The notes: a model not told the origin generated them from the letters alone. Positions 15,863 to 63,784 are shown, counted from the first letter of the stretch. The stretch is 64,000 nt of DNA from Podarcis muralis (GCF_964188315.1 NC_135661.1:74338001-74402000), one strand, 5' to 3'. Numbers and translations are program-made.

Positions 15863-16033
15863 TCAAGGGTTTTGTAGCTCATAACTTCTTGCCTTAAACA
15901 TAATCACAGTTAAGATGATATACAGACATATGAATGTGAGCCCCGCCCCGACTGCCAGGTGGGACAAGAGCTGCGCTGTCCGGGAATGCTGCCGAGCGAC
16001 TGTTCCGTTTCCAGCAAGGTTGGCATCGCGAGT
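15863..16033 (-). CDS. D1 coding exon 2 (56 aa + stop; CD225 loop and TM helix)
   Basis: Pyrimidine tract and acceptor tctctcttcttccccag|ACT; TRDANLAGNGTVARQHSRTAQLLSHLAVGAGLTFICLYIILTVIMFKARSYELQNP*, TGA at 15865-15863. It is not called in the ORF track and was found by manual translation. It is colinear with exon 2 of D2-D5. Confidence 0.9.
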   Translation of the reverse strand, partial: TRDANLAGNGTVARQHSRTAQLLSHLAVGAGLTFICLYIILTVIMFKARSYELQNP

Positions 16034-17098
16034 CTGGGGAAGAAGAGAGAAAATCCATGAAAAAAATGCAACTAGAGACCTTGTCCAGAATGCAGGAATG
16101 GCTGGTAGCTAGCAAACAATCCTTTTGTCTCAGGCTGTGAGGCACTAACCAATAGCCAACAAATTATCTTTGTGATTATATGAACTTGCTGTTCCAAAAC
16201 ATATCTTTTGTAATGTTTCCATAAACCTGTAGGCTGGTTTATCGGGTTCCCATATTTCAAAAAGTAAAAACCAGGATAACCCCCCAAATTGTTGAGCCTT
16301 TTAAAGGAAATAAATGTGACTGACTTGCCTAAGGAGAAAGCTCTGTATATCGGAAATCCGCACCCCACCCCACGGGACATCAATTCTGCCTTTGAAATCC
16401 TGGTAATGTCCAAACAACTGGCAGCCCTAGTTTATATGTATTCTTTTAGAATTAGTTAGCTTAATCATAGTTACTGTCTCGATCCATTCAGATTGCAGTA
16501 GCAGATCTGCTTCCCTCACAGTTTTTAGCTGTTATAATCTTAGTAGCAGTTATAAGGTGGAACACTATTTCTTGATCGTTTCCCAGAATAGCATCATTTA
16601 GATAACCAAGCGGGGATGTTTTAGGTTCCAAGGGCATATGATATCCTAACATATCAGAGATGGATATGGACATGCATGGATTTCCAGAATATTTCTATCT
16701 GAGAGCAATTCCAAAAGATATGTATGTGATCTCCTTCATTTAAACTGTTCTCAACATTGTGCTTTCATTGTTGCAATGCATTCCAAGACCTTAGGGTGAA
16801 GGGCACATAATAAAATAAATTATAGTTGTAGACAGTGCTGGATTTACATATAAGCTAAACAAGCTATAGCTTAGGGCCTCACTCTCTTGCCCCCCCCCCC
16901 AAAAAAAATTAAAGAAAACAATAACCTGGATGTACATTTCCAAAATATAAGATAAAAAATAAAAAAATAAAACCTGCATACAGCAACAGTGTTTTGTTTT
17001 GTGTAGACTCCTATGCCTGGCGTGCTCTGGTCCATGGGGTCACGAAGAGTCGGACACGACTAAACGACTAAACAAACAACAAAATGGGCCCCACCTGC

Positions 17099-17708
17099 CA
17101 TAGCTGTCAATTTACAGATTTGAAAATAAGGGACCAGCAGCCTTGAAAATAAGGGACCAGCAGCCAAAATAAGGGACCTGCAGCCTCACCTGTTCCAGGC
17201 ACTCCAGTTTTCCTGTCCTCCTGCAGTCTGGTCAAACTCATGCTGGTAGCTTCGAGAACACTGTCCAACCAACTTTGTAACCAGCGGTTCAACTGAATAG
17301 AATCTGAATCACATGTACCACAAGGCCTATGCAGCCTCAACTTAAGATGGCTCCCCGGCCTGGCCTGGCTTTGCACTGCAAAGTTTGCAGCAGCACATGC
17401 AACAAAATGGCGTCCAGCATTAAAAAAACCCCTCAGCTTGCATTAACTAGCCACACACAAGGCATGCAAGCTCTACCCCCAGTTGTTCTTAGACTTCTTA
17501 TTGGGTGAGCAACACAGCCATCCAACACAGTTGGAGCCTCCCTCCTCCCTGGCCGGCAGGGAGGGAGGGAGAGGAGCTGCTTCCTTTGAAATTTAAGGGA
17601 CATCATTTAAGGGACATTTAAGGGACACCCATCAATAAGGGACAGCAGCGGGACATGGTGCTGGAATAAGGGACTGTCCCTTCAAATAAGGGACACTTGA
17701 CAGCTATG
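17099..17708. mobile_element. Non-autonomous hAT-type element in the D1 intron
   Basis: TIR CATAGCTGTCAA...TTGACAGCTATG; 8-bp TSD CCACCTGC/CCGCCTGC; subterminal AATAAGGGAC repeats. Confidence 0.75.
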
Positions 17709-18393
17709 CCGCCTGCTAGCCTGCTCCCTAAAATATCACTGGTTTGCTCATTTCTATATGTAGGGTGCCTACATTCTGCATGGATTGGTTGCATGGCAAC
17801 ATGTGCAAATGGCTTTAGATACCTATTAGGTCCATAAATTACCATATAGCCTATATTCAATGCAAAAAACAGCAACAATTTGTTGTTGACAAAGGACAGC
17901 TGGACATATAAAGGGCCCCATTACCTTCAGTAGCTTAGGGCCTCATCAAATCTCAATCCGGCCCTGGTAGTAGTAGTAATCACAATCACAATTAATAATA
18001 ATTTGCACCCACCAATAATTTAGGTGAAGAGTCATTGCTCCGTGGCAGTGCATCTGCTTGGCATGCGGAAGGTCCCAGCTCCATTCCCCGGCATTTCCAG
18101 GTAGGGCTGTGATAGAGCTGAAACCCTGGAGAGCCTCTGGCAGTCACTATTGGGAATACTGAGCTGGATAAATGAATGGCCTGACTTGGGACAAGGCAGT
18201 TTCCTGTGTTCCTAACCAGATGTTTTAAGACTGGAACCTAGCAGAGCACAACAAGACTCAGAGCTTGGGCTGTGTGCTCTGACTGAGTCTCAGAACTGGA
18301 CACTCCTTTGGGTTTCTGCAAACACAGTCTGCACACTGATGAGATCTATTCATCAGCAATTTGGACATTATTGACTTATTCAGAGTAACGATG

Positions 18394-18989
18394 TGTTGTA
18401 AACAAAATCTGCCCTTCTTCCCTTATGGGGTATCCAAGAGCTTGTATAGAGTCCTTAAGTGAGTTCCCTATCGGTAGGAGAAAATAACAGAGGCCAACCA
18501 GAGAATATTGAGAAGCAAAGCAGCTAGTAAACCTGATCTTTATTAAAGCTGTTGCAACAGGGTGCTCCCCTCACACGCAGGAGGACCCAGAACAAAGGTG
18601 TGCCTGCTCTTATATATGTATTTTAAATTCCCAGCCCTGGAGCTCAAGACCACCCCTCCATACATCATACCTATATCACAGAAAAGGCGTCTATAACAGG
18701 AATTTGAATGTTGTTTTTTTTCCTGTCTGCCAGGTTATCTGATTGCCTTTCCTGGTAGTCTGCCCATTCCTTTGAGATGGTGATTACCCAATTCCTGAGA
18801 TAATGGAGAGGCTCCCTCACCCCCTCCCTCCTTGCAGAGAAAACATTTGGTCAGTTTGGGAGTCAAAATGGTTTCAGGGCGGTCTTCCTGTTCTGCTCCA
18901 GACATGTGGTCCACATATCTATGTACGTGCTTGGTTGGTACATTCATGAACATTTATTATATATATAAGACCTTAAATTTTTTATTACA
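18394..18989 (-). mobile_element. Solo ERV-type LTR in the D1 intron
   Basis: TG...CA ends; perfect 5-bp TSD CGATG (18389-18393 and 18990-18994); minus-strand AATAAA near 18540; same family as 44473-45104. Confidence 0.88.
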
Positions 18990-20990: not shown

Positions 20991-21341
20991 CTTTATAGAG
21001 AAAATCAAGGCAGCGATGCCCAGAGGTAGGCAGCAGCACAGCGTGGTGAAGATAGAGTAGCCCAGGTGATCGGGTTCATTGGTAGGCTGAGGAGGCACAA
21101 TGAAGATGGCCTGCGGGGTTTGATCCGAACCTTGGTAGCCTCCTGAATCTGGTGGGCCATAATAAGCTTGGTAAAGAGGTGGCATAGAGGGAGCTGACCC
21201 ATAGCCCGGGGCGGGTGGAGGCTGACCAGGAGGTGCCAGCGGATCAGCCTCTGACTCAAAGGGCTGGTTTTCAGAGAAGGGTGGTGGAGCCTGAGGGTCA
21301 GGCCAGTTGCTGGACTTCTTCTCATAGTTTGGGTCACTCAT
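20991..21341 (-). CDS. D1 CD225/dispanin-family membrane protein, coding exon 1 (117 aa; splices to 16033)
   Basis: ATG at 21341; MSDPNYEKK...EPDHLGYSIFTTLCCCLPLGIAALIFSIK ends at a phase-0 donor AAG|GTGAGA (GT at 20990-20989). The CC(C)xPLGIAA core is the CD225 signature. Confidence 0.93.
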
Positions 21342-29564: not shown

Positions 29565-29708
29565 TCAAAGATCAAAGGGGAAGAGCAAGGAAAGCTACAA
29601 AGTTAGGAGTCCAATCCCTACCATGAGAGCTGTTTCAGCCAAGAGGGGTGTCAACTGAGAGCTTTATTGAGCAGCCAAGCTGTTTCCAGTGATATTTGCT
29701 TCGCGTGT
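29565..29708 (-). pseudogene. Orphan dispanin exon 2 with two nonsense codons
   Basis: Intact acceptor ctctttttctgcacag|ACA; TREANITGNSLAAQ*SSQLTPLLAETALMVGIGLLTL*LSLL aligns without gaps to D2 exon 2, with stops at R15 and Y38. The adjacent intron (29710-29840) resembles the D2/D3 intron. Confidence 0.8.
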
Positions 29709-33311: not shown

Positions 33312-33507
33312 CTGAAGAGAAAGAGAGAGAAGCGAGTGAGAAACCATGCAGCTGGAGAACACCTCCAGCATGCAGAAGTGGCAAGCTGAGAAACAGCTGC
33401 CTTGGTGTTAGCCAACGAAGAATCTTGTTGCTTGAGGCTATCAGTCACTTACCAGTAACCTTGTGGTTTTAGACTGGAACCTAGCAGAGCAGAGCAAGAC
33501 TGTAAGA

Positions 33508-44469: not shown

Positions 44470-44472
44470 TAT

Positions 44473-47923: not shown

Positions 47924-48370
47924 CTGTACAGAGTAGACCAAGGCGACAATACCAAGAGGTAAGCAGCAGCAGAGCATGGTGAAGATGGAGTAGATCAAGT
48001 AATCGGGTTCATTGGTGGGCTCTACAGGTGTGACGTAGACCGCCTGTGGAGGTTGAAGGACTGGGCGTAGGTGAGATCCCGCAACGGGTGGGCCATAGTA
48101 AGGCATTGCCCCATAGCCTGCTTGAGGTGCTGGCATAGCCCCATAGCCTGCTTGGGGTGCTGGCATTGGCCCATAGCCTGCTTGGGGTGCTGGCATTGCC
48201 CCATAGCCTGCATGAGGTGCTGGCATTAACCCATAGCCTGCTTGGGGTGCTGGCCCAGGAGGCTGTTTCAGTGGGTCAGGCTCTGTATAGGCATCTATTT
48301 CAGAGTAGGCAGGGGGGTTCTGAGCGGCAAGTGCCTTCTCACCCAGCTTTTCATGCTTTGGGTTGCTCAT
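47924..48370 (-). CDS. D3 CD225/dispanin-family protein, coding exon 1 (149 aa from the homologous ATG; splices to 45226)
   Basis: ATG at 48370 is homologous to the D2 start (an in-frame upstream ATG lies at 48442). Contains five PAPQAGYGAM-type repeats and EPDYLIYSIFTMLCCCLPLGIVALVYSVQ; donor CAG|GTAGGT, phase 0. Confidence 0.92.
48103..48252 (-). repeat. Coding minisatellite, 5 x 30 bp (PAPQAGYGAM) in D3; 2 copies in D2 at 37454-37513
   Basis: Exact 30-nt periodicity of GCATTGCCCCATAGCCTGCTTGGGGTGCTG (plus strand). Confidence 0.95.
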
Positions 48371-49591: not shown

Positions 49592-51065
49592 GGGTGTCTT
49601 CCCGTGTAAAAGTTGGGGTGTCTAGGCGACGTTTCGACGAGGTCTCACTCGTCATCTTCAGGCTGGTGCTTTCGGCTTCTTGTTACTGGAACAGAGCAGG
49701 ATCTCAGTGTTTGAGTTCCTATAAATACTGTTGAGGAGGTGTGGCCTCTAATGTTCTTGGGCAGAGAGGAAGTTCCCAGGCTAGTGTGCCTTTTCTTCTT
49801 TTGTTTCTTAATTACTTGAGGGATATCTTGAGTGATTTCTTGAGTTGTATCCTGAGTACCACTTAGGTGGGTCATTAGGTGTGGATTAGTTGCTAAAGCC
49901 TTTGTGTCTTGACCTCTTGAACTTTGTGAAGAGTTTTTCTGGGAAGATGGTTGTACTGCATTTTGTTGTGCTCTGGCTTGGCTTCGTGTATAGGGGCGAG
50001 CTGTGGTTTTGTGGTCTGTGCCAGCCAGATCTGTGTAGGGATTGCAGGGGGGTGCAGCATCCGGAGGTGCCACCATGGTTTGGCTACTGGATGGTATCTG
50101 TAATTCATCTGTGGAGAGGGTCTGGGTTTGGGTCTGGTGTGGTTGATTGGTGATGGCGTTCTGTGTGCCTCTGGCTCTGGTGTCAGTTTTTGTGGGGAGG
50201 GCTAATTTCCAGATGTCTGGCAAGCGGGATGTGTCGTCACGCTTGTTCATGTTGTGAGGGTGTTTCTCTATCTCGATGGCTTCCATGATTATTCTCTTGT
50301 GGTGATGTTCCATGTTAAAGAGCAATTTGGAATCTGCAAAATTAATTTCGTGTCCTGTTTCTTTCATGTGTTGGAAAAGAGAGGAAGTTTTTTCTTCTTT
50401 TTTGACGGCATTCTTGTGTTCTGCGATACGTGCATTTATTCGTCTGTTAGTTTGTCCAATGTACGTGGCTGGGCAGACTTTGCAGGGTATTTCATAGACC
50501 CCTTGGTTTTCCAACTGGATTTTATCCTTGGGGTTTCTGAGGATATTGGCTATTTTTTGGTTGGTGCAAAAGGCTGTTTTGATATTGTGTTTATGGAGGA
50601 TTTTGCTAATTTTATCTGTAGTGCCCTTGATATAAGGAAGGAGGGCCATGCCATTGTTTTCTTCTGTGTCTTGGTTTTTTGGGGGTGTTTCTTTTTGGAT
50701 TAGCTTCGTAACCCTGTTTTGCTGGTATCCATTGGCAATTAACACATTTGAGAGATTCTGTAACTCAGTTGTCAAGTGGTTTTTGTCAGCCAGGCGTTTG
50801 GTTCTGGAGATGAGAGTCTTGGCTACGGAGTTTATTTGTGCAGGGTGGTGGTGTGATTGTGCATGTAAGTAGCGGTTGGTGTGTGTTTTTTTCCGGTAGA
50901 TAGTGTGTCCTAGGGAGCCATCAGGTTTTTTGTAGATTAGGACGTCAAGGAAGGGAAGTTGGTTGTTGGCTTCTATTTCCATAGTGAATTGTATTTTGGG
51001 GTGTAGGCTGTTGAGATGTGTGAGGAAGCTATCCAGTTTTTCCTTCCCGTGTGGCCAAATTACAA
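49592..51065 (-). mobile_element. Inverted copy of the Penelope-like 3' 1474 bp
   Basis: Reverse complement of 51369-52842. Mirror coordinates sum to 102434 throughout, and the two 445-aa translations are identical. Confidence 0.9.
49622..49669 (-). ncRNA. Mirror copy of the hammerhead motif
   Basis: Exact reverse complement of 52765-52812, within the inverted arm. Confidence 0.7.
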
Positions 51066-52875
51066 GTCGAAGCTAGCCTAACCAAAATCAACCCAGATGA
51101 AGCCAATAAAATCAGACTTGAAGTCACCAACATCCTCTGCTCCAGCAAACCACCCAGAAGCAATTTACACAAAGAAGAACAGAAAGCACTCACCGACCTG
51201 AGGAAAGACAACAACATAATCATTCTCCCAGCAGACAAAGGTAATGCCACTGTTGTGATGAACACATCGGACTACCAAGCAAAACTATCAAATCTACTCC
51301 AAGACCCTACCTACCAACCTATAAAAACAGATCCCACCACCTTTGGCTCAGATATGTTGACGACACCTTTGTAATTTGGCCACACGGGAAGGAAAAACTG
51401 GATAGCTTCCTCACACATCTCAACAGCCTACACCCCAAAATACAATTCACTATGGAAATAGAAGCCAACAACCAACTTCCCTTCCTTGACGTCCTAATCT
51501 ACAAAAAACCTGATGGCTCCCTAGGACACACTATCTACCGGAAAAAAACACACACCAACCGCTACTTACATGCACAATCACACCACCACCCTGCACAAAT
51601 AAACTCCGTAGCCAAGACTCTCATCTCCAGAACCAAACGCCTGGCTGACAAAAACCACTTGACAACTGAGTTACAGAATCTCTCAAATGTGTTAATTGCC
51701 AATGGATACCAGCAAAACAGGGTTACGAAGCTAATCCAAAAAGAAACACCCCCAAAAAACCAAGACACAGAAGAAAACAATGGCATGGCCCTCCTTCCTT
51801 ATATCAAGGGCACTACAGATAAAATTAGCAAAATCCTCCATAAACACAATATCAAAACAGCCTTTTGCACCAACCAAAAAATAGCCAATATCCTCAGAAA
51901 CCCCAAGGATAAAATCCAGTTGGAAAACCAAGGGGTCTATGAAATACCCTGCAAAGTCTGCCCAGCCACGTACATTGGACAAACTAACAGACGAATAAAT
52001 GCACGTATCGCAGAACACAAGAATGCCGTCAAAAAAGAAGAAAAAACTTCCTCTCTTTTCCAACACATGAAAGAAACAGGACACGAAATTAATTTTGCAG
52101 ATTCCAAATTGCTCTTTAACATGGAACATCACCACAAGAGAATAATCATGGAAGCCATCGAGATAGAGAAACACCCTCACAACATGAACAAGCGTGACGA
52201 CACATCCCGCTTGCCAGACATCTGGAAATTAGCCCTCCCCACAAAAACTGACACCAGAGCCAGAGGCACACAGAACGCCATCACCAATCAACCACACCAG
52301 ACCCAAACCCAGACCCTCTCCACAGATGAATTACAGATACCATCCAGTAGCCAAACCATGGTGGCACCTCCGGATGCTGCACCCCCCTGCAATCCCTACA
52401 CAGATCTGGCTGGCACAGACCACAAAACCACAGCTCGCCCCTATACACGAAGCCAAGCCAGAGCACAACAAAATGCAGTACAACCATCTTCCCAGAAAAA
52501 CTCTTCACAAAGTTCAAGAGGTCAAGACACAAAGGCTTTAGCAACTAATCCACACCTAATGACCCACCTAAGTGGTACTCAGGATACAACTCAAGAAATC
52601 ACTCAAGATATCCCTCAAGTAATTAAGAAACAAAAGAAGAAAAGGCACACTAGCCTGGGAACTTCCTCTCTGCCCAAGAACATTAGAGGCCACACCTCCT
52701 CAACAGTATTTATAGGAACTCAAACACTGAGATCCTGCTCTGTTCCAGTAACAAGAAGCCGAAAGCACCAGCCTGAAGATGACGAGTGAGACCTCGTCGA
52801 AACGTCGCCTAGACACCCCAACTTTTACACGGGAAGACACCCGAGGACACCAAAACCTGCATTCCTGTACCCGTG
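51051..52875 (+). mobile_element. Penelope-like element (RT + GIY-YIG endonuclease), internally deleted
   Basis: ILPADKGNATVVM (RT N-terminus) is joined out of frame at about 51342 to WLRYVDDTF, then ORF 51452-52789 with GVYEIPCKVCPATYIGQT (GIY-YIG). A gap follows. Confidence 0.92.
52765..52812 (+). ncRNA. Minimal type I hammerhead ribozyme motif in the Penelope 3' end
   Basis: CTGAAGA (52773-52779), T, stem II GACGAG-tgagac-CTCGTC, GAAA (52799-52802), then CGTC (palindromic ACGT, GUC cleavage triplet). Stem I pairing is weak. Confidence 0.7.
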
Positions 52876-54725
52876 NNNNNNNNNNNNNNNNNNNNNNNNN
52901 NNNNNNNNNNNNNNNNNNNNNNNNNNNNNNNNNNNNNNNNNNNNNNNNNNNNNNNNNNNNNNNNNNNNNNNNNNNNNNNNNNNNNNNNNNNNNNNNNNNN
53001 NNNNNNNNNNNNNNNNNNNNNNNNNNNNNNNNNNNNNNNNNNNNNNNNNNNNNNNNNNNNNNNNNNNNNNNNNNNNNNNNNNNNNNNNNNNNNNNNNNNN
53101 NNNNNNNNNNNNNNNNNNNNNTTGAACACCACAGCAATATGCACATAAGGGCTTTCTACAAATGCTCTTATGACTCTGCTGTATTTCTCCTTTTGTGCAA
53201 ACGGCAGCAAGAAACAGTGATTCCTGGCATTTCATCCATGGGGGGGGGGGGCGCGACTCCTTCTTCTCCACTTCCTGCCATGGAGTGGAAAGAGGGTCGA
53301 AGCAGCTTCCTGCTCCAGGAGAAGGTGGAGTCTGAACCCCAGCCATTGAATCCACCTGGCCGCCATGTTTGGCTGGATGTTCCCCTGGCTCTTCCAGATG
53401 TCATGAAGTCACATGTGTGGCGTCATGCGTGGCATTGCCCCCCCTTCCATCGCCCTCCCAAGCTGGTGCAGGGTGGGGACCAAAGGTGGGCAAACTACCC
53501 CAGAAGGAGCACGGCATGTCCCCCGCCAGAGGTACTGCCCCCTACCCTAACGCTGCATAAAACCCCAATCATATAATATGTATATTACATCACATCATTT
53601 TTATTTTTATCACTCCGAGAGGCTTCCAAAGCACCATACATGCGCATTATTTGCCTTTAAAACACCAGACTGGATGAATACAAGAGGTGGCATTTAATTC
53701 ACGTTCAAGACACATCTTCCTCTTTTATGTTAAGGGAGGGGGACTGAAGCAGTTCAGGACTGGGGGCCAAATGTGCTGCTGTAAGCCTCACTATTTGACC
53801 CTCGGCCACACCTTCACTGCCCCTCTTCCGCAGAGCTTGGGCTGAAATTTTTGCGATGAGAATACGGGTATTCGAAGCACAGAATGCAACTTAATATTTC
53901 CTATTTGGAACTGTATCGTTTGTGTATCAGAAAGGAATCACCCATGATGTCCATCACTTGCTATGTGTAGAGCATAGGGATACTTTGATTACTTTCCCTC
54001 GGTAGAATAGAGTTTTGGGTCGTCCCCCCTTTATTTTCCCTTCTACACGGGTTCTGTTTCTCTTTCTCTCTTTTATTTATGTCTCACAATGTTTAGTGCA
54101 CATAAAATTATGTACTTTTTGAACTTTCAATAAAGATGTCAAGAAAAGAAGAAGTGTAGAGCATTTGAATATTTTAATTACTTTGCTTTGGTAGAATTGG
54201 GTTCACATTTTTCTGCCTTGACTTGTTTAGCCATTACACCTATGTTATAAACAGTTTGAGTCATTACCTTCAACATATTCACATACCCATGGCTTATTCT
54301 GGCTCCCGGCTTTATTTTATGTCTGCAGTTGTTCATCTCTGATCAATAATGATAAGTGGAGTCGGCATCCTGTCATCAGATCCTGTTTGATAACATTGCA
54401 TTTTTCAGAATCTCTTATAATCCCCCCACACCCCCTTTTCAAAAATTATATATATACTTAGGAACAGATTTCCAATGTGTATTGGAATATATGACAGGAT
54501 GTATTACAGAATATATTACAAATTTGCTCCTAGGCATTGCCTCTAAAGTGACTACATTAAGTGCTCTGAAAGTTCATGCACCCCATTGCTCGTCATTGCG
54601 TAAATTCAATAGAAATCATGTGATGTGCATGCATGTGTCAAAATGCACAGCATCCAACCAGGCCTTCTCTGATTATTGCAGTGGTGGGGAGGTTTTTCAG
54701 GGGGTGGAGAATGTGCGGCAAAACC

Positions 54726-54896
54726 TTAGTTGTGTGGATGCTGATTTTTTGCATTTGTATACACAATTGCCATTATTATGATATACACAACAATTAAGAC
54801 GCATCCCACCCCGAGGGCTGTGTTGGCCAAAATGCGCGCCATCTTGGAGTTTCTCTTGGCAGCTATGACATCTCCATTAAGGTTGGCTTCTCGGGT
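54726..54896 (-). CDS. D4 coding exon 2 (56 aa + stop)
   Basis: Acceptor tctctctttctccgcag|ACC; TREANLNGDVIAAKRNSKMARILANTALGVGCVLIVVYIIIMAIVYTNAKNQHPHN*. Confidence 0.9.
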   Translation of the reverse strand, partial: TREANLNGDVIAAKRNSKMARILANTALGVGCVLIVVYIIIMAIVYTNAKNQHPHN

Positions 54897-56999
54897 CTGC
54901 GGAGAAAGAGAGAGAGAGAGAACTGACGGCAGATGTAAAGGAGAAGCACAGCTGTGCGTCATTGGCCTATCACTGACAACTGTGCTCCAGAACTCCAGAT
55001 AACCCCACTCAGTGGTTTCATGTAGATGTTAAACAGCAGGGGGGATAAAATCATACCCCAGGGGAATCCCACATTTCTGAGAAAGTTCATGTCTGTGTTT
55101 GGGTGAAGGAGGACTAACAGGAAGCAGGAAAGATAAACAAAAGAGAAAGTGACCTTGCTAGAAGAGGTCATAAAGTGAGGAACAGAGGCGACACAGTGTG
55201 GTGGGGAAAATAACTACAGGGGAATTTGTGTTTTTAATTCAGCCTTTAATATAGCCTATACTCAAGAGTATGCAGGAAGATGAAAAGAAATGAAAAGAAC
55301 CACAGAAACACGGGGAAGGGAGTCAAAGTTTGAAATGCTAAAATTATGATGGAATAATTGTTGTAATATATCTAAATGAAAATTATAAAAAAATTAAAAG
55401 ATAAATAAATAAAGGATTCAGAGTTTTGTCTTCCCCAATGGCCAGAGGCTGTGGCAATGTCATCTTTGGAGTTGGAAGACCCAATGCAAGCAGAGACTCC
55501 TTTGCTCCACCGTAACACAGAGGGCTGGGCCCATTTAAGCAAAACAACAACTCACACTGCTGGTAGAGGCAGCTGTGCTGATACTATATAGGGCGGAGGC
55601 TGCCTTTATTTCCTGCTGAAGCGTAGGAGATTCAGAGTTGCAGATCTTAGCTTGAACCCTCCAGCCAGCTGGAACCCTCTTGAACACAGACTTGATTCAG
55701 TCCCCTCTCTGAACCTCACCCTGCCTGAGTTTTGCCTTGACTGAGCAAAAGCAACATCTGAGCGATCCCCTTATCCTGCTCTCTTTGAGACCACCACCCA
55801 CTTTGTGCTATGCCATTTCTCCTGTAGCACGACACCATGGCTTAAATGATGGGTGTTGTAGGAATTCTAAGGTCTCAAATATAGAATAAATGTTGATAAT
55901 TGCACACATGCATAAGTCTATATCCCACAATAGTGCAGGAGAGCAATTGAAAAGCCAGCTTGGGTCTCCTAAAGACTCTAAATATTTCCTCTGCTTCCTT
56001 AATCCCTCTTGCCTGAGACCACATGGGCAGGTAGCAATGAGGGGAAGTTCCTGAAGGGATTCCTCTCCTATATCTATTGAACCTCCTTTTTATTAAGTGT
56101 CACTGTTTGCCCAGATGAGGGATGACTGACAGGCATCCTGATTGTCTTATCCAGGGGTCCGCAAGGTTTACCTTGCCTGGGTTGGTTCACTCCAGCAGAA
56201 ATCCCTCTGTGGGCCAGATCGTGCGGGCGCCCGTGATTTCCGGCATCTGCGCAGACGCAATTTCTGGTGCTGCGAAAGCGAGTCCCTGTACCAGTTTAGC
56301 ACAGCAAGCGGGGACTCGCTGAGCAGGCGGCTCAGTTTGGGGGTGGCTCATGGGAGGGTTATACGATCCACGCGGTCCACTTGTGACCCAAGGGCCTTAG
56401 GTTGCTGACCCCTGGTCTTATCAAATGCCTTTTCTGCAAAACTGTGTCTGGAACTATGTAAATCTTGCCAAATCCTCAGGAATATGAAACCTTGGCCTAC
56501 CTGAGCCACAGTTACCCCACATTATGTGTGATGTAATTTCTGACTGTAAAGGGGATGTCCTTCTTCTCCATGCCAAAATGAAAACCCTTAAAAGAAATGT
56601 TTTTTCTTGGTTCTGGGTCTCTCTACGCTCCTTGCTAGGTGGGGAGGGAACTCTGCTGCAACAGAAAAATAAAGATCTGCCTTGCTTTCACTGCTTCCTG
56701 CCTCCATCCATTTATCTCTGACTGATCATAGACTAAGGGGACTCGGTCCCTTAAGAAGTTGGGCAGCAAAAGTCAACCACCCCTATTTTTCTTTATCAGT
56801 TGGGGTGAGGAAAGAGTCCCCAAAGCCTGAATCCAAAATCCCTAGGCTCCCCTGCTCCCTGAATTTCAGCCACACCACAAGTCGCCTTCTACAGACTGTT
56901 GCTAAAAGGAAATCAGAAAAGGTCATGGGGCCTTTTGGACTGCCTGTTATTATAGCACTACATCTCCCCCAGCCCAAAGAAAAAGAGGGAGGAGCTCAC

Positions 57000-57344
57000 C
57001 TGCATAGAGTAAATTAAGGCAGCAATGCCCAGGGGGAGGCAGCAGCAAAGCATGGTACAGATAGAGTAGGCCAGGTAATCAGGTTCATTGGCAGGTGGAC
57101 CACGAATGATGACGGTGGCCTGCGGAGGTTGAAGGATCGGAACCTGGTAGGATCCTGCACCAGCTGCACCATAGTGTTGGTACTGGGATGGCACAGGGTT
57201 AGAGGGCCAGCCCATGTGGCGGGGTTCTGGTCCAATAAGAGGTTTTGTTGGCTCAGGGTCTTCATGGGAGTCTTTGTCAGCGTAAGGAGGTGGATCCTGA
57301 GTGGTGGTGGTGGAATCCTCTTTCAGCCTCTCATAGTTGCTCAT
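57000..57344 (-). CDS. D4 CD225/dispanin-family protein, coding exon 1 (115 aa; splices to 54896)
   Basis: ccgccATG at 57344; MSNYERL...PPPY...EPDYLAYSICTMLCCCLPLGIAALIYSMQ; donor CAG|GTGAGC, phase 0. Confidence 0.93.
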
Positions 57345-58001
57345 GGCGGACGGCCTCCTCTCCTTTTCCTCCCCTTTGCTCCCCGAAGCTGGCAGTCTGT
57401 GATTAGCTGCTGGGTGCTCTGCTCTTCCTCTCCTCAGCTGCACCTCTAACTCTTCTCCCCGCCTCCTGCTGCCTCCCTCCCTTCCTCTTTCTCTTTCGGT
57501 GAACTTTGGTCTTCTTTTGCCTAGGCGTTGGCTTTACATTGCTGGCTGTGCTGCTCAGGTGGCCGCTAGTCCGTGCTCTGTCTCTGGAATGGAACAGCAG
57601 CTCCACTGAGTCTTTCACCCCGGACGTGCGAGTGGCTGGGAACGAGGAAATTGGTAATGACTCCTCCCCTAAAACTGCATACACCCCAGTCATAAAATAC
57701 GTACAATCGTACCTTGGTTTTCGAACAGCTTAGTTCCCGAACATTTTGGCTCCCGAATGTCGCAAACCTGTAAGTGACTGTTCCAGTTTGTGAACTGTTT
57801 TTGGAAGCCAAACATTCTAAGGGGCTTTCACGGCTTCTGACTGGCTGGAGCTTCCTGCAGCCAATCAGAAGCCACAATTTGGTTTTCAAACGTTTTGGCA
57901 GTTGAACTGACGACCGGAATGGATTCCATTTGACTTCCACGCTGCAACTGTATATTATATCATATCACATATTTATTTATATCACTCTGAGGCTCCCAAA
58001 G

Positions 58002-58292: not shown

Positions 58293-58736
58293 TATACAAT
58301 TGCAGTATAGCCACACTGGCATATAATTGCAGTATTTGCCTTTGAAACACAAGACTGCACAAATAGAATAGATGGCATTTACTAATTAACGTTCAAAGCA
58401 CATCTTTTTCTTTAGATTTAAGGCAGGGATGGGGCGCTTCAGGACTGGGTGCCCAATGTCCTGCTCTAGGCCTCACTGTTTGGCCCCAGGCCACACCTTC
58501 CCTGCCTGTGTTCTGCAGGGCTTGGGCTGGAATTTGTAGGGTGAGAAGACGGGTATGATAGGCATGTATTCCTGTTGGTGAAGTGTTGGGAGAATTTAGG
58601 CACCAGGCCCAGCAGTGCTGAGCAGACGTGGCAGGAGGGTTGGAAAAGGGAGTTAATCGCCCGATAACAAGAGGAAGGGAACAAAACTAGAGGATGGAGT
58701 CTTATATAGGAAGGTAAAACTGGGCAGGATGGTGGG

Positions 58737-58786
<50 letters not shown>

Positions 58787-59565
58787 TTATTTATACCCCG
58801 CCCATCTGGCTGGGTTTGCCCAGTCACTCTGGGTGGCTTCCAACATAATATTAAAATACAATAGTCCATCAAACATTAAAAGCTTCCCTAAACAGGGCTG
58901 CCTTCAGATGTCTTCTAAAAGTCTGGTAGTTGTTTTTCTCTTTGACATCTGGTGGGAGGGCGTTCCACAGGGCGGGTGCCACTACCGAGAAGGCCCTCTG
59001 CCTGGCTCCCTGTAACTTGGCTTCTCACAGCAAGGGAACCGCCAGAAGGCCCTCGGTGCTGGACCTCAGTGTCCGGGTAGAACGATGGGGGTGGAGACGC
59101 TCCTTCAGGTATACTGGACCGAGGCCGTTTAGGGCTTTAAAGGTCAGCACCAACACTTTGCATTGTGCTCAGAAGCATACTGGGAGCCAGTGTAGGTCTT
59201 TCAAGACTGGTTTTATGTGGTCTCGGCTACTCCCAGTCACCAGTCTAGCTGCCACATTCTGGATTAGTTGTAGTTTCCAGGTCACCTTCAAAAGTAGCCC
59301 CACGTAGAGCACATTGCAGTAGTCCAAGTGAGCAATAACTAGAGCATGCACCACTCTGGGGAGACAGTCTGCGGGCAGGTAGGGTCTCAGCCTGCGTACC
59401 AGATGGAGCTGATAAACAGCTGCCATGGACACAGAATTGACCTGCACCTCCATAGACAGCTGTGAGTTCAGAATGACTCCCGGGCTGCACACCTGGTCCT
59501 TCAGGGGCACAATTACCCCATTCAGGACCAGGGACTCCTCCACACCTGCCCGCCTCCTGTCCTCC
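58737..59565 (-). mobile_element. L2-clade LINE 3' fragment with (ATT)n tail
   Basis: ORF 59169-59543 LDYCNVLYVG...LHWLP; same family as 25279-26092. Confidence 0.88.
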
Positions 59566-60057
59566 AGTGAGGAGAGTTGCAGCTGGGAGCCAGAAGGTTA
59601 AGCCCATATCATGATTTTAAGGCAGGGGCAGACTTTGGTCTTTCAGATTTCAGAGACTCCCTGCCCAAGGCCAACATTTGGTGCCTCCCACCTCTCACTT
59701 TCCATTCTGCTCAATTCACCATGCCATAGTTGTGGTGCCCAGTGCAGCAGAAGCAGTCACACTGCCCTAAATCCAACTTTGTTTTAAGGGCATGGATCAT
59801 TATATTTTATTGTTGCCAATTCTGGGGCAACTAACATGGCCATTGTCCATGGGACTCTGCGTGGTATCCAACTGAATTCTACTCAGGGTAGCCCCACTGA
59901 ACAGAATGGACCCAAGTCAGTCATATCCATTAATTTCAATGGGTATACTTTGAGTAGAGGAAGCACTGGATACAACCTAATCATTCCTACTTGGAATGTT
60001 TGTGTATCAGAAAGGAATCACCCGTGATGTCCTCCACTTGCTAAGTGTAGAACATTT

Positions 60058-61021
60058 GTCCATGGCAAGTCTGTGTCTGTAATGCAAGTTGTTCATATGT
60101 TGCGAGTTTGTATAAGTCTTCAATCCAATCATAGAAGGGAGCTGCATTTTTATTTTTCCAATTCATCAGGATCAGTCTTTTTGCTGTGGTAAGGGAGAGT
60201 CCACTCGTATTGTCCTTTTGTAAGGTTCCATGTGCTGGCTATATAATTCAAGAGGATATTTTGCTCTGTAAATTTAAGGTTGCTTTGTAAAGTTCTATTG
60301 ATAGTTTGTTACCTTCTGCCAAAAATCTTTCAATATAGGACAGTGAAAAAACATACAGTATGTTTTAGAAAAGCATTATCCTATTGCATCTCCAACAGTT
60401 AGATACATTAGATAGCCCTTTTTAAAACAAATGTAATGGGGTCCAGTATATTCTAAATATTATTTTTTGTTGTACGAGTCTCAATCTAAGGTCCATTGAC
60501 ACCCTTGTTATAGCACTTAAAACAGTTTCCCACTGTGTGGTTGAAATGGAGATCTTTGATTCTTCCAATCCTCCCTCAGTACCTGTATATCAAATTGGTT
60601 TGCTAATAACAAAGATTCATATATGTTGATGGCTGGGTTTTTTTTGTTGCGTAAGATTTAATCAATGATATTTGGAATCCATTCTTACAAATACTGTAAT
60701 AGGTTAAGATCTGCTGAAGTACAATAACAACCTTGTAAAGCATAGAGTTTGGGGTCCCCCCCCTTTATTTCCCCTTCTACATGGGTTTTGTTTCTCTTTT
60801 TATTTTTCTCTCTTTTATTTATGTCTCTCAATGTTTAGTGCACATAAAATTATGTACTTTTTGAACTTTCAATAAAGATGCAATAGTAATTTATTATTTG
60901 TACCCCGCCCATCTGGCTGGGTTTCCCCAGCCACTCTGGACAGCTTCCAACAAAGATTAAAAATACATTAAAATGTCACACATTTAAAAACTTCCCTGAA
61001 CATGTCAAAAGAAGAAGAAGT
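60058..61021. mobile_element. 5'-inverted (twin-primed) L1-clade insertion with a nested short L2 piece (about 60884-61000)
   Basis: About 60058-60655 is the reverse complement of the colinear L1 at 6185-7030, while about 60658-60877 is the sense 3' end. 14-bp TSD AGTGTAGA(A/G)CATTT at 60044-60057 and 61022-61035. Confidence 0.75.
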
Positions 61022-61825
61022 AGTGTAGAGCATTTGAATATTTTAATTACTTTGCTTTGGTAGATTAGGGTTCATGTTTTGTAACCTTGCCTTGTTTAAC
61101 CATTACGCCTACGTAATAAACAGTTCTAGCCACTCACTTCCACACATTCACATACAGAATGTTTATTTTGTCTTTATATTATGTCTGTATTTGTCCATCT
61201 CTGATCTATAATTGTAAATGGAGTATGCATATTGTCACCAGATCCTGCTTAATAACATTGTGTTTTTCAGAATATCTTATAAACCCCATCCCCGTTTTTA
61301 AAAATTATAATGTGTATAGGAATATATGGCAGAGTATAGGATATTACATTCCCCACCCCCCCCCAGGTAGAACTTCCAAGAGCACTTGATGACACCTTTG
61401 GGACAATGCTTTGAACTTCACACATCCCATTGTTGGCCATCAAGTAAAATACAGTGGTACCTCGGGTTAAGAACTTAATTTGTTCCGGAGGTCCGTTCTT
61501 AACCTGAAACTGTTCTTAACCTGAAGCACCACTTAAGTTAATGGGGCCTCCCGCTGCCGGAGCACAATTTCTGTTCTCATCCTGAAGCAAAGTTCTTAAC
61601 CCGAGGTAATATTTCTGGGTTAGCGGAGTCTGTAACCTGAAGCATATTGTAACCCGAGGTACCACTGTAAACAGAAATCATGCAATGAGCCTGTACGTGT
61701 GACTCAGTCCTTTAGCACTTCCTGCTGTGGAATGATTCATAAAGCACAGCGTCCAGCCAGGCCTTCTTCTCAGTAGCGCAACGGTGGGGAGGTCTTTCGA
61801 AATGTGGAGGCTCTGCAGTGAATCC

Positions 61826-61996
61826 TCAGTCCAGTGGGTGCTGGTTTTGCAGTTGCCAATACAAAGTTGCCATTATGATGATATACATAATGAAGCAGAA
61901 GCAGCCCACTCCGAGGGCTGTGTGGTTCAAGATGCGAGCCATCCTGGAGTTTCGCTTGGCAGCTATCACATCTCCATTAAAGTTGCCTTCTTGGGT
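61826..61996 (-). CDS. D5 coding exon 2 (56 aa + stop)
   Basis: Acceptor tctctctttctccacag|ACC; TQEGNFNGDVIAAKRNSRMARILNHTALGVGCFCFIMYIIIMATLYWQLQNQHPLD*. Confidence 0.9.
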   Translation of the reverse strand, partial: TQEGNFNGDVIAAKRNSRMARILNHTALGVGCFCFIMYIIIMATLYWQLQNQHPLD

Positions 61997-62068
61997 CTGT
62001 GGAGAAAGAGAGAGAGAACTGGTGGCAAATGTAAAGGAGAAGTAGACCTGTGCATCACCAGCAAGGTA

Positions 62069-62319
62069 CAGTGATACCTTGGTTGTCGAACTGCTTGGCT
62101 CCTGAACAAATCGGCTCCCGAACGCCTCAAACCTGGAAGTAAGTGTTCTGGTTTGTGAACGTTTTTTGGAAGGCGAACTACTGACGTGGCTTCTGTGGCT
62201 TCCAATTGAGTGCAGGAAGCTCTTGCAGCCAATTGGAAGCTGCACCTTGGTTTCTGAATGGTTCTGGGAGTCAAAGGGACTCCCGGAATGGATTAAGTTC
62301 GACAACCAAGGGACCACTG
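62069..62319. mobile_element. Tigger-type MITE in the D5 intron; related elements at 41442-41904 and about 57704-57950
   Basis: TA-CAGTGATACCTTGG...CCAAGGGACCACTG-TA; absent from the paralogous D4 intron. Confidence 0.8.
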
Positions 62320-63445
62320 TACTCCAAAACTCCAGATAACCCCACTCAGTGGTTTTATGTCGCTGTTAAACAGCAGAGGGGATAAAATCAAACCCAGAGG
62401 AACCCCACACTGAAGGGTCCAGGGGGTCGAAGAGCACTCCCTGAGCATCACCTTCTAGAAATGACCATCCAAGTAGGACCTGGGCCACCATGAAACAGGC
62501 CACCCACCCCTAACTCAGAAAGCTGCCCAGCAGCTCAGACAAAGCCTCGTTTGTGAAAACAAATGCCCCAAAGAATCCATGCAACTTTAAAGTGGTCATC
62601 AGAGACTCTTTCCTGTTTCGCTGCAACAGGCTAACCCAGCTGTCTCTCTGGATGTTGGCTGCCTGAGAGCCATCCTGCGCCCGCAGGGGAACAGGAGTAA
62701 AGTCCTCTTTAGGTGGTGAGGTGCAGGACTCCGAAACGAAAGGAGGAAGGCTACGCAGGAGACACCCCAGAAAGATTGCTACCCAAAGTGCCTGTGGGGC
62801 CAGTGTCTGACTCCTCATTGGTCAGAGGCTGTGACAATGTCACACTTAGACTTGGAGGACCCACTACAAGCAGGGAATCCTCGGCTCCACCATAGCAACA
62901 AGAGACCAATGCAGAGGACTGGGCCCCTTTAAGCAAAGCAAAAACTTTCAGCGCTGGCGGAGGCAGCTGTGCTGAGGCTCATTTTATTTCCTGCTGAAGC
63001 GTAGGAGATTCAGAGTTGCAGATCTTAGCTTGAGCCCCTCCAGCCAGCTGGAACCCTCCTGCACACAGACGTGATTCAGTCCCCTCTCTAGACCTCACCC
63101 TGCCTGAGTTTTGCCTTGACTGAGCAAAAGCAACATCTGAGCGATCCCCTTATCCTGTTCTCTTTGAAACCACCACCCACTTTGTGCTCTGCCATTTCTC
63201 CCTGTCCCTGTGGACAACACGGTGGCTTGAATTATTGGGGTGGGGAAAGGGCCCCCAAACCTTGAAATCCAGAACCCTTAGGCTCACCTGCCCCCCCGAA
63301 TTTCAGCTACAAAACAAGCCACCCTGTAGCCTTCTACAGGCCTCTGCTACTGGGGCCACCAGAAAAGGTCATGGGGCCTATTGGACTGCCTGTTATTATA
63401 GCACTACATCTCCCCCAGCCCAAAGAAAAAGAGGGAGGAGCTCAC

Positions 63446-63784
63446 CTTTATAGAGTAAACTAAGGCAGCAATGCCCAGGGGGAGGCAGCAGCAAAGCATG
63501 GTACAGATAGAGTAGGCCAGGTAATCAGGCTCCTTGGCAGGTGGACCACAAATGATGACGGTGGCCTGCGGAGGTTGAAGAATCGGAAACTGGTGGGATC
63601 CAGCACCAGCTGCAACATAATGTTGGTACTGGGATGGCACAGGGTTAGAGGGCCAGCCCATGCGACGGGGTTCTGATCCAGAAAGAGATTTAGCTGGCTC
63701 AGGGTCTTCATGGGAGTCTTTTTCAGAGTAAGGAGGTGGATCCTGAGCGATGGGTTCCTCTTTCAGCCTCTCGTAGTTGCTCAT
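63446..63784 (-). CDS. D5 CD225/dispanin-family protein, coding exon 1 (113 aa; splices to 61996)
   Basis: ttcaccATG at 63784; MSNYERL...PPPY...EPDYLAYSICTMLCCCLPLGIAALVYSIK; donor AAG|GTGAGC, phase 0. Confidence 0.93.

What the first reader, a model, noticed from the sequence alone, without database searches (positions are those of the whole stretch)
15863..63784. Tandem array of five intact, proline-rich CD225/dispanin genes: a candidate squamate IFITM-like family expansion
Seen: five same-strand two-exon genes with intact ORFs, canonical splice sites, a shared phase-0 intron after YS(I/V/M)(K/Q), a triple-Cys LCCCLPLG core and a C-terminal TM helix. They are arranged as D1 + (D2,D3) + (D4,D5) by nested tandem duplication. 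Established: CD225 proteins include the antiviral IFITMs, which split at the equivalent position (AYSVK|SRD), are S-palmitoylated on vicinal Cys, and expand by tandem duplication, whereas mammalian neuronal dispanins (PRRT1, SYNDIG1, TMEM91) are typically single-copy. These proteins are not classical IFITMs: the N-terminus is long and Pro/Tyr-rich, and the loop reads TREAN..G rather than SRDRKM.G. Inference: a separate dispanin lineage has been amplified in an IFITM-like birth-and-death mode, possibly as membrane-fusion or virus-entry restriction factors. Function is not shown by the sequence.
Basis: partly seen in the sequence, partly recalled or inferred. Interest (0 to 1): 0.85.

Follow-up and report, generated by a model that had tools for sequence, protein, structure and literature searches.

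The report
Tandem PRRT1-like CD225 genes in wall lizard
The window holds five real, intact, tandemly duplicated small membrane-protein genes of the CD225/dispanin family. They belong to an old, little-studied "PRRT1-like" branch shared with fishes and amphibians, and nothing in the sequence shows that they are interferon-driven antiviral genes.

Summary
All have GT-AG splice sites and a phase-0 intron, and no assembly gap falls inside any of them.

The window is Podarcis muralis, and the gene models match existing RefSeq proteins. The array is larger than reported. There is a dead orphan exon 2 at about 29.6-29.7 kb, and in two relatives a further paralogue sits just upstream of the last gene, beyond the window end.

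The lineage is not special to squamates. It is the clade that one preprint calls prrt1l in fish. I found it in teleosts, bichir, caecilians, salamanders and squamates, often in tandem.

The two close pairs arose in the lacertid stem. Orthologues evolve at dN/dS of about 0.4-0.5.

The features offered as IFITM-like do not discriminate. The intron position is shared by all dispanins. No ISRE occurs anywhere in the window. The strict GxxxG motif is absent. The closest solved relative is PRRT1.

The most likely role is a PPxY/YxxΦ-regulated membrane-trafficking or fusion regulator. An antiviral role remains untested.

Verdict: a new member (a lineage-specific expansion) of a known kind, of modest interest.

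The parts
63446..63784 (-). g63 exon 1. ATG at 63784. Pro-rich N-terminus with YERL and PPPY, and the first hydrophobic helix with LCCCLPLG. Ends ...YSIK followed by GT.
   Evidence: Pfam CD225 7.6e-11
61826..61996 (-). g63 exon 2: loop TQEGN..., second TM helix and stop codon.
   Evidence: Pfam CD225 1e-06
57000..57344 (-). g57 exon 1 (ATG at 57344).
   Evidence: near-identical to P0017
54726..54896 (-). g57 exon 2 with stop codon.
47924..48370 (-). g48 exon 1 (ATG at 48370). An in-frame upstream ATG at 48442 is the start used by database protein P0115. Contains five 10-aa PAPQAGYGAM repeats.
45083..45226 (-). g48 exon 2 with stop codon. Short C-terminus: homology to g37 ends at 45102, so the last codons come from the duplication junction.
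37275..37631 (-). g37 exon 1 (ATG at 37631).
   Evidence: spliced product identical to P0001
33138..33311 (-). g37 exon 2 with stop codon.
20991..21341 (-). g21 exon 1 (ATG at 21341). The most divergent copy: it ends ...FSIK, and PPPF replaces PPxY.
15863..16033 (-). g21 exon 2 with stop codon (loop TRDAN...).
29610..29726 (-). Orphan pseudo-exon 2 (TREANITGNSLAAQ*...) with in-frame stops and no matching exon 1. Relic of a lost copy, next to a LINE insertion.
33187..38946 (.). Duplication unit carrying g37. It is 89-95% identical to the g48 unit and runs across gap 1 (38613-38808).
45102..53251 (.). Duplication unit carrying g48. It equals the g37 unit plus an inverted pair of Penelope-like copies (49592-52842) bounded by gaps 2 and 3.
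53644..57545 (.). Duplication unit carrying g57, in patches 73-81% identical to the g63 unit.
58329..64000 (.). Duplication unit carrying g63. It is cut off by the window end.

Best explanation
**What it is.** The locus is part of a tandem array of paralogous prrt1l-type (PRRT1-like) CD225/dispanin genes in Podarcis muralis.

**The proteins.** Each gene encodes a protein of about 170-200 aa with three parts:
- A disordered, proline-rich N-terminus. It carries a PPxY motif (a ligand type for WW-domain E3 ligases such as NEDD4) and YxxΦ motifs (a signal type for AP-2 sorting).
- A hydrophobic helix with a three-cysteine cluster that could be S-acylated, followed by a short basic loop.
- A C-terminal transmembrane helix.

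**Likely function (inferred, not shown).** Like other CD225 proteins (PRRT2, TRARG1/TUSC5, IFITM3, PRRT1), they most likely act as small non-enzymatic regulators of vesicle trafficking or membrane fusion. Their own localisation and turnover would be set by the N-terminal motifs.

**History.** The array grew by repeated single-gene tandem duplication. The g37/g48 and g57/g63 pairs arose in the lacertid stem. There are signs of gene conversion in the 5' half, and at least one copy was lost. The surviving copies are under moderate purifying selection.

**Basis of each step.** Gene identity, structure and history are shown by the sequence. The trafficking role, acylation, and NEDD4 or AP-2 binding are inferred from family knowledge.
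For: - Gene models and splice sites. They are identical or near-identical to RefSeq proteins.
- CD225 domain in both halves of all five genes.
- AlphaFold2 model: residues 1-93 disordered, helices 94-126 and 129-170 with pLDDT 72-90. Hydropathy gives two hydrophobic segments per protein.
- PP.Y is nearly invariant across the fish-to-lizard alignment: P19 is invariant, and P20 and Y22 are at least 90% conserved.
- YE[RQ]L occurs at the N-terminus of three copies, and YGAM/YGAV occurs in the repeats.
- Clade membership: zebrafish NP_001373279.1 (P0330) shares a 90% cluster with P0120, which scores 6.7e-54 against the family profile.
- Zebrafish has the same two coding exons, the same junction and a second copy 4.5 kb downstream.
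- Tree: g63 + Lacerta (98), + g57 (99), + Rhineura (99); g48 + Zootoca (94), + g37 (100), + Rhineura (95).
- Podarcis-Lacerta orthologues have dN/dS of 0.40-0.47. For exon 2 alone the values are 0.20-0.34.
- Every coding indel between paralogues is a multiple of 3. In the flanking non-coding DNA, 29 of 36 indels are not.
- Short RNA-derived contigs from relatives carry the uninterrupted ORF joined at the predicted junction.
- SNARE, AP-2 and NEDD4 links of CD225 proteins come from PMC11730294, PMC7665892 and PMC9716219.
Against: - No expression, localisation or interaction data exist for these lizard genes.
- Paralogue-pair dN/dS is 0.67-0.74 and its bootstrap interval includes 1. One member of a pair could therefore be only weakly constrained.
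- g21 has lost the Tyr of PPxY, and g48 and g21 lack the N-terminal YxxL.
- The positional match to IFITM3 and PRRT2 residues (central Arg, GxxxG) rests on counting from the conserved splice junction, not on a tool alignment.
- The only functional report for the clade is one fish preprint on a neural/circadian phenotype. It does not establish a molecular mechanism.
Confidence: 0.6

Rival explanations
1. One reading: the array is an IFITM-like family of interferon-induced restriction factors. They would block virus-cell membrane fusion and would have been amplified by an arms race.
For: - Tandem expansion with gene death, and copy sets that differ between lineages.
- Fairly fast protein evolution: dN/dS of 0.4-0.7.
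- A cysteine cluster next to the membrane, PPxY and an N-terminal YE[RQ]L. From memory, these resemble the PPNY/YEML region of IFITM3.
- CD225 expansion is grouped with immune gene families in blue catfish (PMC9270728).
Against: - The 64 kb window has no strict ISRE. The single loose core, 143 bp upstream of the g57 ATG, is not conserved in the Lacerta orthologue. There is none in the 600 bp upstream of six related genes in other lacertids.
- GAS-like sites occur at about the chance rate (my estimate).
- The second Gly of GxxxG, needed for IFITM3 oligomerisation and entry restriction (PMC7665892), is S, A or V.
- The intron position is shared by all dispanins (PMC3282796).
- The closest solved relative is PRRT1, not an IFITM.
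- Lizards keep classical IFITM genes (PMC3499546).
- No comparison gave dN/dS above 1 for a whole gene.
Confidence: 0.15
2. The copies are neuron-specific PRRT1/SynDIG-like proteins, for example glutamate-receptor or synaptic-vesicle accessory proteins. The duplicates would be largely redundant.
For: - The best PDB match is PRRT1/SynDIG4: E = 2.8e-12 over residues 62-168.
- Fish prrt1l is expressed in the hypothalamus and SCN. F0 knock-out shortens the free-running period by about 30 minutes (preprint 10.64898/2026.03.31.715739).
Against: - There are two coding exons rather than the three of PRRT1 and subfamily C (PMC3282796).
- Multi-copy arrays and dN/dS of 0.4-0.7 are unusual for conserved synaptic proteins.
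- Coral-snake members come from UniProt entries that I believe are venom-gland transcriptome records (from memory, not checked here). If so, expression is not restricted to brain.
Confidence: 0.15
3. Some of the five copies are young duplicates drifting towards pseudogenes. Their ORFs would be intact only because too little time has passed.
For: - Paralogue dN/dS is 0.67-0.74, and 13-20% of bootstraps are at or above 1.
- N-terminal dN/dS for g37/g48 is 1.36.
- A dead exon 2 shows that copies do die here.
Against: - Both g57 and g63 have intact orthologues in Lacerta agilis with dN/dS of 0.40-0.47.
- The g48-type short C-terminus is kept in Zootoca (P0003).
- There are no frameshifting indels in coding DNA, whereas 29 of 36 indels in adjacent non-coding DNA are not multiples of 3.
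Confidence: 0.08
4. The close pairs are assembly artefacts, that is, haplotypes or collapsed and expanded repeats placed in tandem around the gaps.
For: - Three gaps lie between the units.
- A 100% identical inverted pair of Penelope-like copies sits between gaps 2 and 3.
Against: - The pairs differ by 5-20% in DNA and 16-22% in protein, far more than alleles would.
- Each member has its own orthologue in another genus.
- The gap flanks are collinear with the paralogous unit.
Confidence: 0.02

Closest known systems
Fish prrt1l (zebrafish NP_001373279.1, tiger puffer XP_003965976.1; preprint 10.64898/2026.03.31.715739)
   Same: - Same clade. The profile hit is 6.7e-54, with 44% identity over 95% of g37.
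- The core ...DYL.YSIFTMLCCCLPLGIAAL.YSI.TR.AN..G is almost invariant.
- Zebrafish has the same two coding exons and the same junction.
- Tandem copies are also present.
   Different: - Lizards have at least six or seven paralogues against one to a few in most fish.
- Squamate copies have their own N-terminal MS..NYE.L motif.
- The fish phenotype (circadian period) has not been examined in reptiles.
PRRT1 / SynDIG4 (dispanin D1), PDB 9zks chain M
   Same: - The only solved structure with sequence similarity (E = 2.8e-12, CD225 region).
- Proline-rich N-terminus with a two-helix CD225 domain.
   Different: - PRRT1 is 306 aa, has an extra N-terminal coding exon (PMC3282796) and reads CCFWPTG where these genes read CCCLPLG.
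- At 49.7 bits it scores below all 150 listed representatives (57.5 bits or more), which include invertebrate proteins.
- The two searches used slightly different queries, so this comparison is approximate.
IFITM1-3 (dispanin subfamily A)
   Same: - CD225 domain, two coding exons and tandem clusters.
- Membrane-proximal cysteines.
- PPxY and YxxΦ-type motifs in the N-terminus.
   Different: - No ISRE here.
- A much longer Pro-rich N-terminus (85-120 aa before the domain).
- The strict GxxxG is absent.
- Different core sequence, and a different clade.
PRRT1B (dispanin D2)
   Same: - Two-exon subfamily-D gene (PMC3282796).
- NCBI names several fish, salamander and Pogona members PRRT1B or PRRT1B-like.
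   Different: - Orthology could not be tested here.
- The one search restricted to long proteins found no mammalian protein.
- NCBI names for this clade also include PMIS2, TMEM91-like, TRARG1-like, SYNDIG1-like, IFITM-like and CYSTM1-like, so the names are not evidence.
PRRT2 and TRARG1/TUSC5 (dispanin subfamily B), SNARE-binding CD225 proteins
   Same: - Same domain.
- An Arg at the position of the R-SNARE-like central Arg in four of five copies (counted from the junction).
- Long Pro-rich N-terminus.
   Different: - Subfamily B has a C-F-C motif (PMC3282796) and an intact GxxxG (PMC7665892).
- Those genes are single-copy.

Membership tests
CD225/dispanin superfamily (Pfam PF04505) | CD225 domain scoring above Pfam's cut-off | tested here: met
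   Exon-1 pieces score 40.2-46.0 bits and four exon-2 pieces score 27.6-29.2 bits, against a cut-off of 27.1. The g21 exon 2 alone scores 24.0. The two halves cover profile positions 3-30 and 31/33-68.
CD225/dispanin superfamily (Pfam PF04505) | Two hydrophobic helices separated by a short basic loop, with a long N-terminus and a very short C-terminus | tested here: met
   Hydropathy segments and AlphaFold2 helices 94-126 and 129-170.
CD225/dispanin superfamily (Pfam PF04505) | Conserved splice site in the loop between the two helices (PMC3282796) | tested here: met
   Phase-0 GT-AG intron after [YF]S[IVM][KQ] in all five genes. The same junction appears in zebrafish and in cDNA contigs from relatives.
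CD225/dispanin superfamily (Pfam PF04505) | Conserved residues: Asp before helix 1, double Cys in helix 1, and G-D/N plus A-x6-A in the loop (PMC3282796) | tested here: met
   D93, C104, C105, G127 and A132 are invariant and A139 is nearly invariant in the 20-sequence alignment.
Interferon-inducible IFITM (dispanin subfamily A) | ISRE (and GAS) in the 5' flank (PMC9716219) | tested here: not met
   - No strict ISRE occurs in 64 kb.
- One loose, non-conserved core lies near g57.
- None occurs in the 600 bp upstream of six genes in related lacertids.
- GAS-like TTCNNNGAA sites occur at about the chance rate.
- Limits: transcription start sites are unknown, only 216 bp lies upstream of g63, and gaps sit about 1 kb upstream of g37 and g48.
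Interferon-inducible IFITM (dispanin subfamily A) | Closest relatives are IFITMs | tested here: not met
   The closest solved relative is PRRT1. The genes group with fish prrt1l. No full tree with bona fide IFITMs could be built.
Interferon-inducible IFITM (dispanin subfamily A) | GxxxG in the loop, with the second Gly needed for oligomerisation and entry restriction (PMC7665892) | tested here: not met
   Counting from the splice junction, the motif reads GNAAS (g37, g48), GDVIA (g57, g63) and GNGTV (g21). Small-xxx-small is kept in four of five. The alignment is positional and by hand.
Interferon-inducible IFITM (dispanin subfamily A) | Interferon induction, S-palmitoylation and restriction of virus entry | not testable with these tools
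   These need expression data and cell assays.
PRRT1/SynDIG4 (dispanin D1) | Additional N-terminal coding exon and a protein of about 300 aa (PMC3282796) | tested here: not met
   The whole ORF lies in two exons and gives 169-196 aa.
PRRT1/SynDIG4 (dispanin D1) | Association with AMPA receptors | not testable with these tools
   This is a biochemical property.
prrt1l clade (PRRT1-like, non-mammalian vertebrates) | Groups with zebrafish NP_001373279.1 and shares the near-invariant core | tested here: met
   The squamate and caecilian rows group together against the six fish rows; the tree was rooted on the fish.
prrt1l clade (PRRT1-like, non-mammalian vertebrates) | Two coding exons with the junction after ...YSI[x] | T[RQ] | tested here: met
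PRRT1B (dispanin D2, described as mammal-specific) | Orthology by tree and synteny | not tested
   No mammalian PRRT1B sequence could be obtained through the tools. Only NCBI names point to it.

The most novel reading that the evidence does not exclude
The prrt1l clade would be a second CD225 family, independent of the IFITMs, that evolves by birth and death in squamates, salamanders and fishes. I did not see it in mammals or birds. Its expanded copies would act as pathogen-facing fusion or entry regulators, under regulation other than a classical ISRE.
Probability: 0.12. Interest if true: 0.7.

Novelty: new member of a known kind. Interest (0 to 1): 0.35.

Why it matters
CD225 proteins control membrane fusion in antiviral defence, neurotransmission and glucose transport. 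Almost everything known about them comes from the mammalian members.

This locus documents a well-preserved branch of the family. I found it only in fishes, amphibians and squamates. It duplicates repeatedly in tandem and has essentially no literature. Current database names for it contradict one another.

If some copies turn out to be immune effectors, that would widen the known set of vertebrate fusion-restriction factors. If they are neural trafficking regulators like fish prrt1l, the squamate expansion would be a case of paralogue diversification worth expression profiling.

As it stands, the finding is a sound gene-family annotation, not a new kind of system.

Tried and rejected
- **Structure search.** Foldseek of the AlphaFold2 model against the PDB gave nothing at E <= 0.001. 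A two-helix hairpin is too generic.
- **RNA families.** An Rfam scan of the whole window found nothing.
- **Flanking genes.** ORFs of at least 70 aa in bases 1-15800 show only repeat-derived reading frames and no recognisable neighbouring gene, so the window itself gives no synteny anchor.
- **Synteny in other species.** Flanks of ±10 kb in Zootoca, Lacerta, P. lilfordi, zebrafish and Phrynosoma showed only further CD225 genes or nothing.
- **Reaching named mammalian dispanins.**
  - The profile search lists only its best 120 hits, and all were from this clade.
  - The exhaustive representative search returned 150 proteins of 57.5 bits or more. All 27 of these that carried a name (30 were looked up) were squamate, amphibian, fish or invertebrate.
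  - A search restricted to long proteins found nine hits, none mammalian.
  - A full A-D subfamily tree could therefore not be built.
- **Positive selection.** No whole-gene or exon-level dN/dS exceeded 1, apart from a noisy 1.36 for the g37/g48 N-terminus. The faster divergence of g57/g63 exon 2 (dS 0.43 against 0.095 in exon 1) is better explained by gene conversion of the 5' half.
- **Promoter footprinting.** Alignment of g57 and g63 with their orthologues found conserved blocks but no ISRE.

Full report
**1. Observation**

The motif LCCCLPLG occurs five times in the window, always in minus-strand frames. Each occurrence lies in an ORF that starts with ATG and runs into a GT right after [YF]S[IVM][KQ]. 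Downstream of each, on the same strand, is a second ORF piece. It is preceded by a polypyrimidine tract and AG, and it begins T[RQ][ED][AG]N.

Joining the pieces gives proteins of 169, 171, 196, 176 and 173 aa, here called g63, g57, g48, g37 and g21.

Both halves of every gene match Pfam CD225. Exon 1 matches profile positions 3-30, and exon 2 matches positions 31 or 33 to 68.

[quoted passage not shown] The g57, g63 and g21 models differ by only a few residues from 171-, 169- and 173-aa cluster representatives of Podarcis proteins. So the window is Podarcis muralis, and the splice models agree with the public annotation.

In relatives, short RNA-derived contigs carry the uninterrupted ORF with the two exons joined at the predicted point.

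**2. Assembly gaps**

All three N runs are intergenic.
- Gap 1 (38613-38808) lies 982 bp upstream of the g37 ATG.
- Gap 2 (49359-49591) lies 989 bp upstream of the g48 ATG.
- Gap 3 (52876-53121) lies 1.6 kb beyond the g57 stop.

No reading frame or intron crosses a gap.

The flanks fit the duplication structure. The 929 bp before gap 1 match the sequence before gap 2 at 88.8%. The 138 bp after gap 1 match the sequence after gap 3 at 88.4%. The g48 unit is therefore the g37 unit plus an insertion bounded by gaps 2 and 3. I did not try to fill any gap.

**3. Structure of the array**

Protein identity is 84% for g37/g48, 78% for g57/g63 and 40-53% for all other pairs. At the DNA level, 33187-38606 matches 45102-49358 at 89-93%. 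Patches of 53644-57545 match 58329-64000 at 73-81%.

These are two separate single-gene duplications, not a nested block duplication. Homology between the g37 and g48 units ends inside the 3' end of exon 2, at 33187/45102. This explains the short, different C-terminus of g48.

A sixth exon-2-like piece at about 29610-29726 has in-frame stops and no partner exon 1. It lies next to an intact LINE ORF.

In Podarcis lilfordi and Lacerta agilis, a further intact paralogue (162 aa, P0130 type) lies 5-8 kb upstream of the g63 orthologue. The array therefore very probably continues beyond base 64000. Zootoca has yet another type, P0022.

**4. Which family**

The first search found more than 100 relatives. 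Squamates have several per chromosome. The rest were teleosts and a caecilian. NCBI names them inconsistently: PRRT1-like, PRRT1B, SYNDIG1-like, TRARG1-like, TMEM91-like, PMIS2 and CYSTM1-like.

An alignment of 20 squamate, caecilian and fish members shows a nearly invariant core...PDYLGYSIFTMLCCCLPLGIAALVYSI.TR.AN..G..., and a conserved PPPY near the N-terminus.

A profile search gave 925 hits. The 120 listed were all squamate or fish.

An exhaustive search of 1.84 billion representatives with the g37 CD225 domain returned 150 proteins of 57.5 bits or more. I looked up 30 of them and 27 carried a name. Those were squamates, caecilians, salamanders (Lissotriton, Pleurodeles, Ambystoma, several per chromosome), Polypterus, a teleost and invertebrates. 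None was a mammal, bird, turtle, crocodilian or frog. This is not proof of absence.

The only solved structure with sequence similarity is PRRT1 (9zks chain M, E = 2.8e-12, 49.7 bits).

Zebrafish NP_001373279.1 sits in the same 90% cluster as P0120, a strong member of the clade. Preprint 10.64898/2026.03.31.715739 calls that accession zebrafish prrt1l. [quoted passage not shown] It also reports SCN/hypothalamic expression, and a period about 30 minutes shorter in puffer F0 knock-outs.

Zebrafish prrt1l has the same two coding exons and junction, plus a second copy 4.5 kb downstream. Phrynosoma has three copies in 22 kb.

**5. History and selection**

The tree is a quick IQ-TREE run of 80 rows with SH-aLRT support.
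- g63 pairs with its Lacerta orthologue (98). g57 then joins (99), then Rhineura P0015 (99).
- g48 pairs with Zootoca P0003 (94). g37 then joins (100), then Rhineura P0004 (95).
- Both duplications therefore fall in the lacertid stem, after the split from amphisbaenians.
- Geckos, iguanians and snakes have their own clusters, so copies are not 1:1 across squamates. Deep nodes are poorly resolved.

| Comparison | dN/dS |
|---|---|
| Paralogue pairs, whole gene | 0.67-0.74 (bootstrap intervals include 1) |
| Podarcis-Lacerta orthologues, whole gene | 0.40-0.47 (upper 95% limits 0.93-1.08) |
| Podarcis-Lacerta orthologues, exon 2 only | 0.20-0.34 |

For g57/g63, exon 2 has dS of 0.43 against 0.095 in exon 1. 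That fits gene conversion of the 5' half better than positive selection.

Coding indels between paralogues are all multiples of 3. In the neighbouring non-coding DNA, 29 of 36 are not. The copies are therefore maintained genes that evolve fairly fast.

**6. The IFITM-like interpretation**

The Dispanin paper shows that the splice site between the two helices is shared by essentially all eukaryotic dispanins. It also shows that two-exon structure occurs in subfamilies A, B and D2 (PMC3282796). These features therefore do not point to IFITMs.

IFN-responsive IFITM1-3 typically carry an ISRE and a GAS site in the 5' flank, whereas IFITM5 and IFITM10 do not (PMC9716219). Here the strict ISRE pattern has no match in 64 kb. 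The single loose core (GAAAGAGAAAG, 143 bp upstream of g57) reads GATAGAGAAAG in Lacerta. The six related lacertid promoters have none.

Counting from the conserved junction gives two positional comparisons. This is a hand alignment that uses IFITM3 numbering from the papers and from memory.
- The Arg matching IFITM3 R85 is present in four copies (Q in g63).
- The second Gly of 91-GxxxG-95, which is needed for IFITM3 oligomerisation and entry restriction (PMC7665892), is S, A or V.

Anole lizards have classical IFITM genes (PMC3499546, PMC3424830). This array therefore does not replace them.

None of this excludes an antiviral role, but nothing in the sequence supports one.

**7. Likely mechanism**

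The AlphaFold2 model (mean pLDDT 64; 72-90 in the domain) shows a disordered residue 1-93 segment and a helical hairpin at 94-126 and 129-170.

The N-terminus carries PPxY in four copies (PPPF in g21). YE[RQ]L occurs at residues 4-9 in three copies. g37 and g48 also carry two and five YG.[MV] repeats respectively. The CCC cluster sits in the first hydrophobic helix.

Known CD225 proteins show three relevant behaviours: SNARE binding by PRRT2, TUSC5 and IFITM3 (PMC11730294), AP-2 sorting through YEML, and NEDD4 ubiquitination of IFITM3 (PMC9716219). By analogy, I infer small trafficking or fusion regulators whose localisation and turnover are set by these motifs. This step is inference.

**8. 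Verdict**

This is a lineage-specific tandem expansion of a known but barely studied CD225 clade that is already annotated in public databases under inconsistent names. Interest is modest.

Noticed in passing
window 29610-29726 (-): Orphan CD225 exon-2 relic (TREANITGNSLAAQ*...) with in-frame stops and a plausible acceptor. No exon-1 relic was found between it and g37. It could also act as a truncating alternative 3' exon of g37, but that is speculation.
   Followed up: partly
window 26198-29299 (+); fragment at 22466-22818: Intact 1033-aa LINE ORF with endonuclease and reverse-transcriptase domains, lying between g21 and the relic exon. A 94% identical inverted fragment of its 3' end lies at 22466-22818.
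   Followed up: partly
window 49592-51065 and 51369-52842: Two 100% identical copies in inverted orientation. Each has a 445-aa ORF with a weak GIY-YIG match (Penelope-like), and the pair is bounded on both sides by assembly gaps. This is either the head-to-head arrangement such elements can have or an assembly artefact.
   Followed up: partly
window 48102-48254 (-), g48 exon 1: A 30-bp tandem repeat with 5.1 copies encodes PAPQAGYG(A/L/P)M. Database protein P0115 for the same gene has six units and starts at the upstream ATG (48442). g37 has two units and its isoform P0002 has one. Repeat number therefore varies between copies, and apparently between assemblies or alleles.
   Followed up: partly
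L003:10001-12544 (Podarcis lilfordi) and L002:4546-6512 (Lacerta agilis): A further intact 162-aa paralogue (P0130 type) lies 5-8 kb upstream of the g63 orthologue. The P. muralis array therefore probably extends beyond the window end at 64000.
   Followed up: yes
about 195-215 bp upstream of the ATGs of g57 (near 57540-57560) and g63 (near 63980-64000): A block CC[AG]GCAAT[GA]TAAAGCCA is conserved between both paralogues and their Lacerta and P. lilfordi orthologues. A second block, CCAGCAGCTAATCACAGAC, lies nearer the ATG. These are candidate core-promoter elements (a TATA-like box in Lacerta g57). No ISRE is present.
   Followed up: partly
g63 residues 3-10 and g57 residues 3-9 (window 63755-63778 and 57318-57338, minus strand): The N-terminal NYERLKEE/NYERLKE resembles the NYEMLKEE stretch of human IFITM3 that holds its AP-2 sorting signal. 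That IFITM3 sequence is recalled from memory and was not checked with a tool. The motif is present in squamate copies but not in the fish members aligned.
   Followed up: no
g57/g63: exon 1 (57000-57344 / 63446-63784) against exon 2 (54726-54896 / 61826-61996): Mosaic divergence: dS is 0.095 in exon 1 and 0.43 in exon 2, with introns about 13% diverged. This suggests gene conversion of the 5' half after an older duplication.
   Followed up: partly
window 34974-35145 and 45756-45880 (introns of g37 and g48); 40256-40522: Trinucleotide repeats that read as poly-Cys or poly-Arg in some frames lie in the introns of both g37 and g48. Long (TG/CA)n microsatellites lie between g37 and g48.
   Followed up: no
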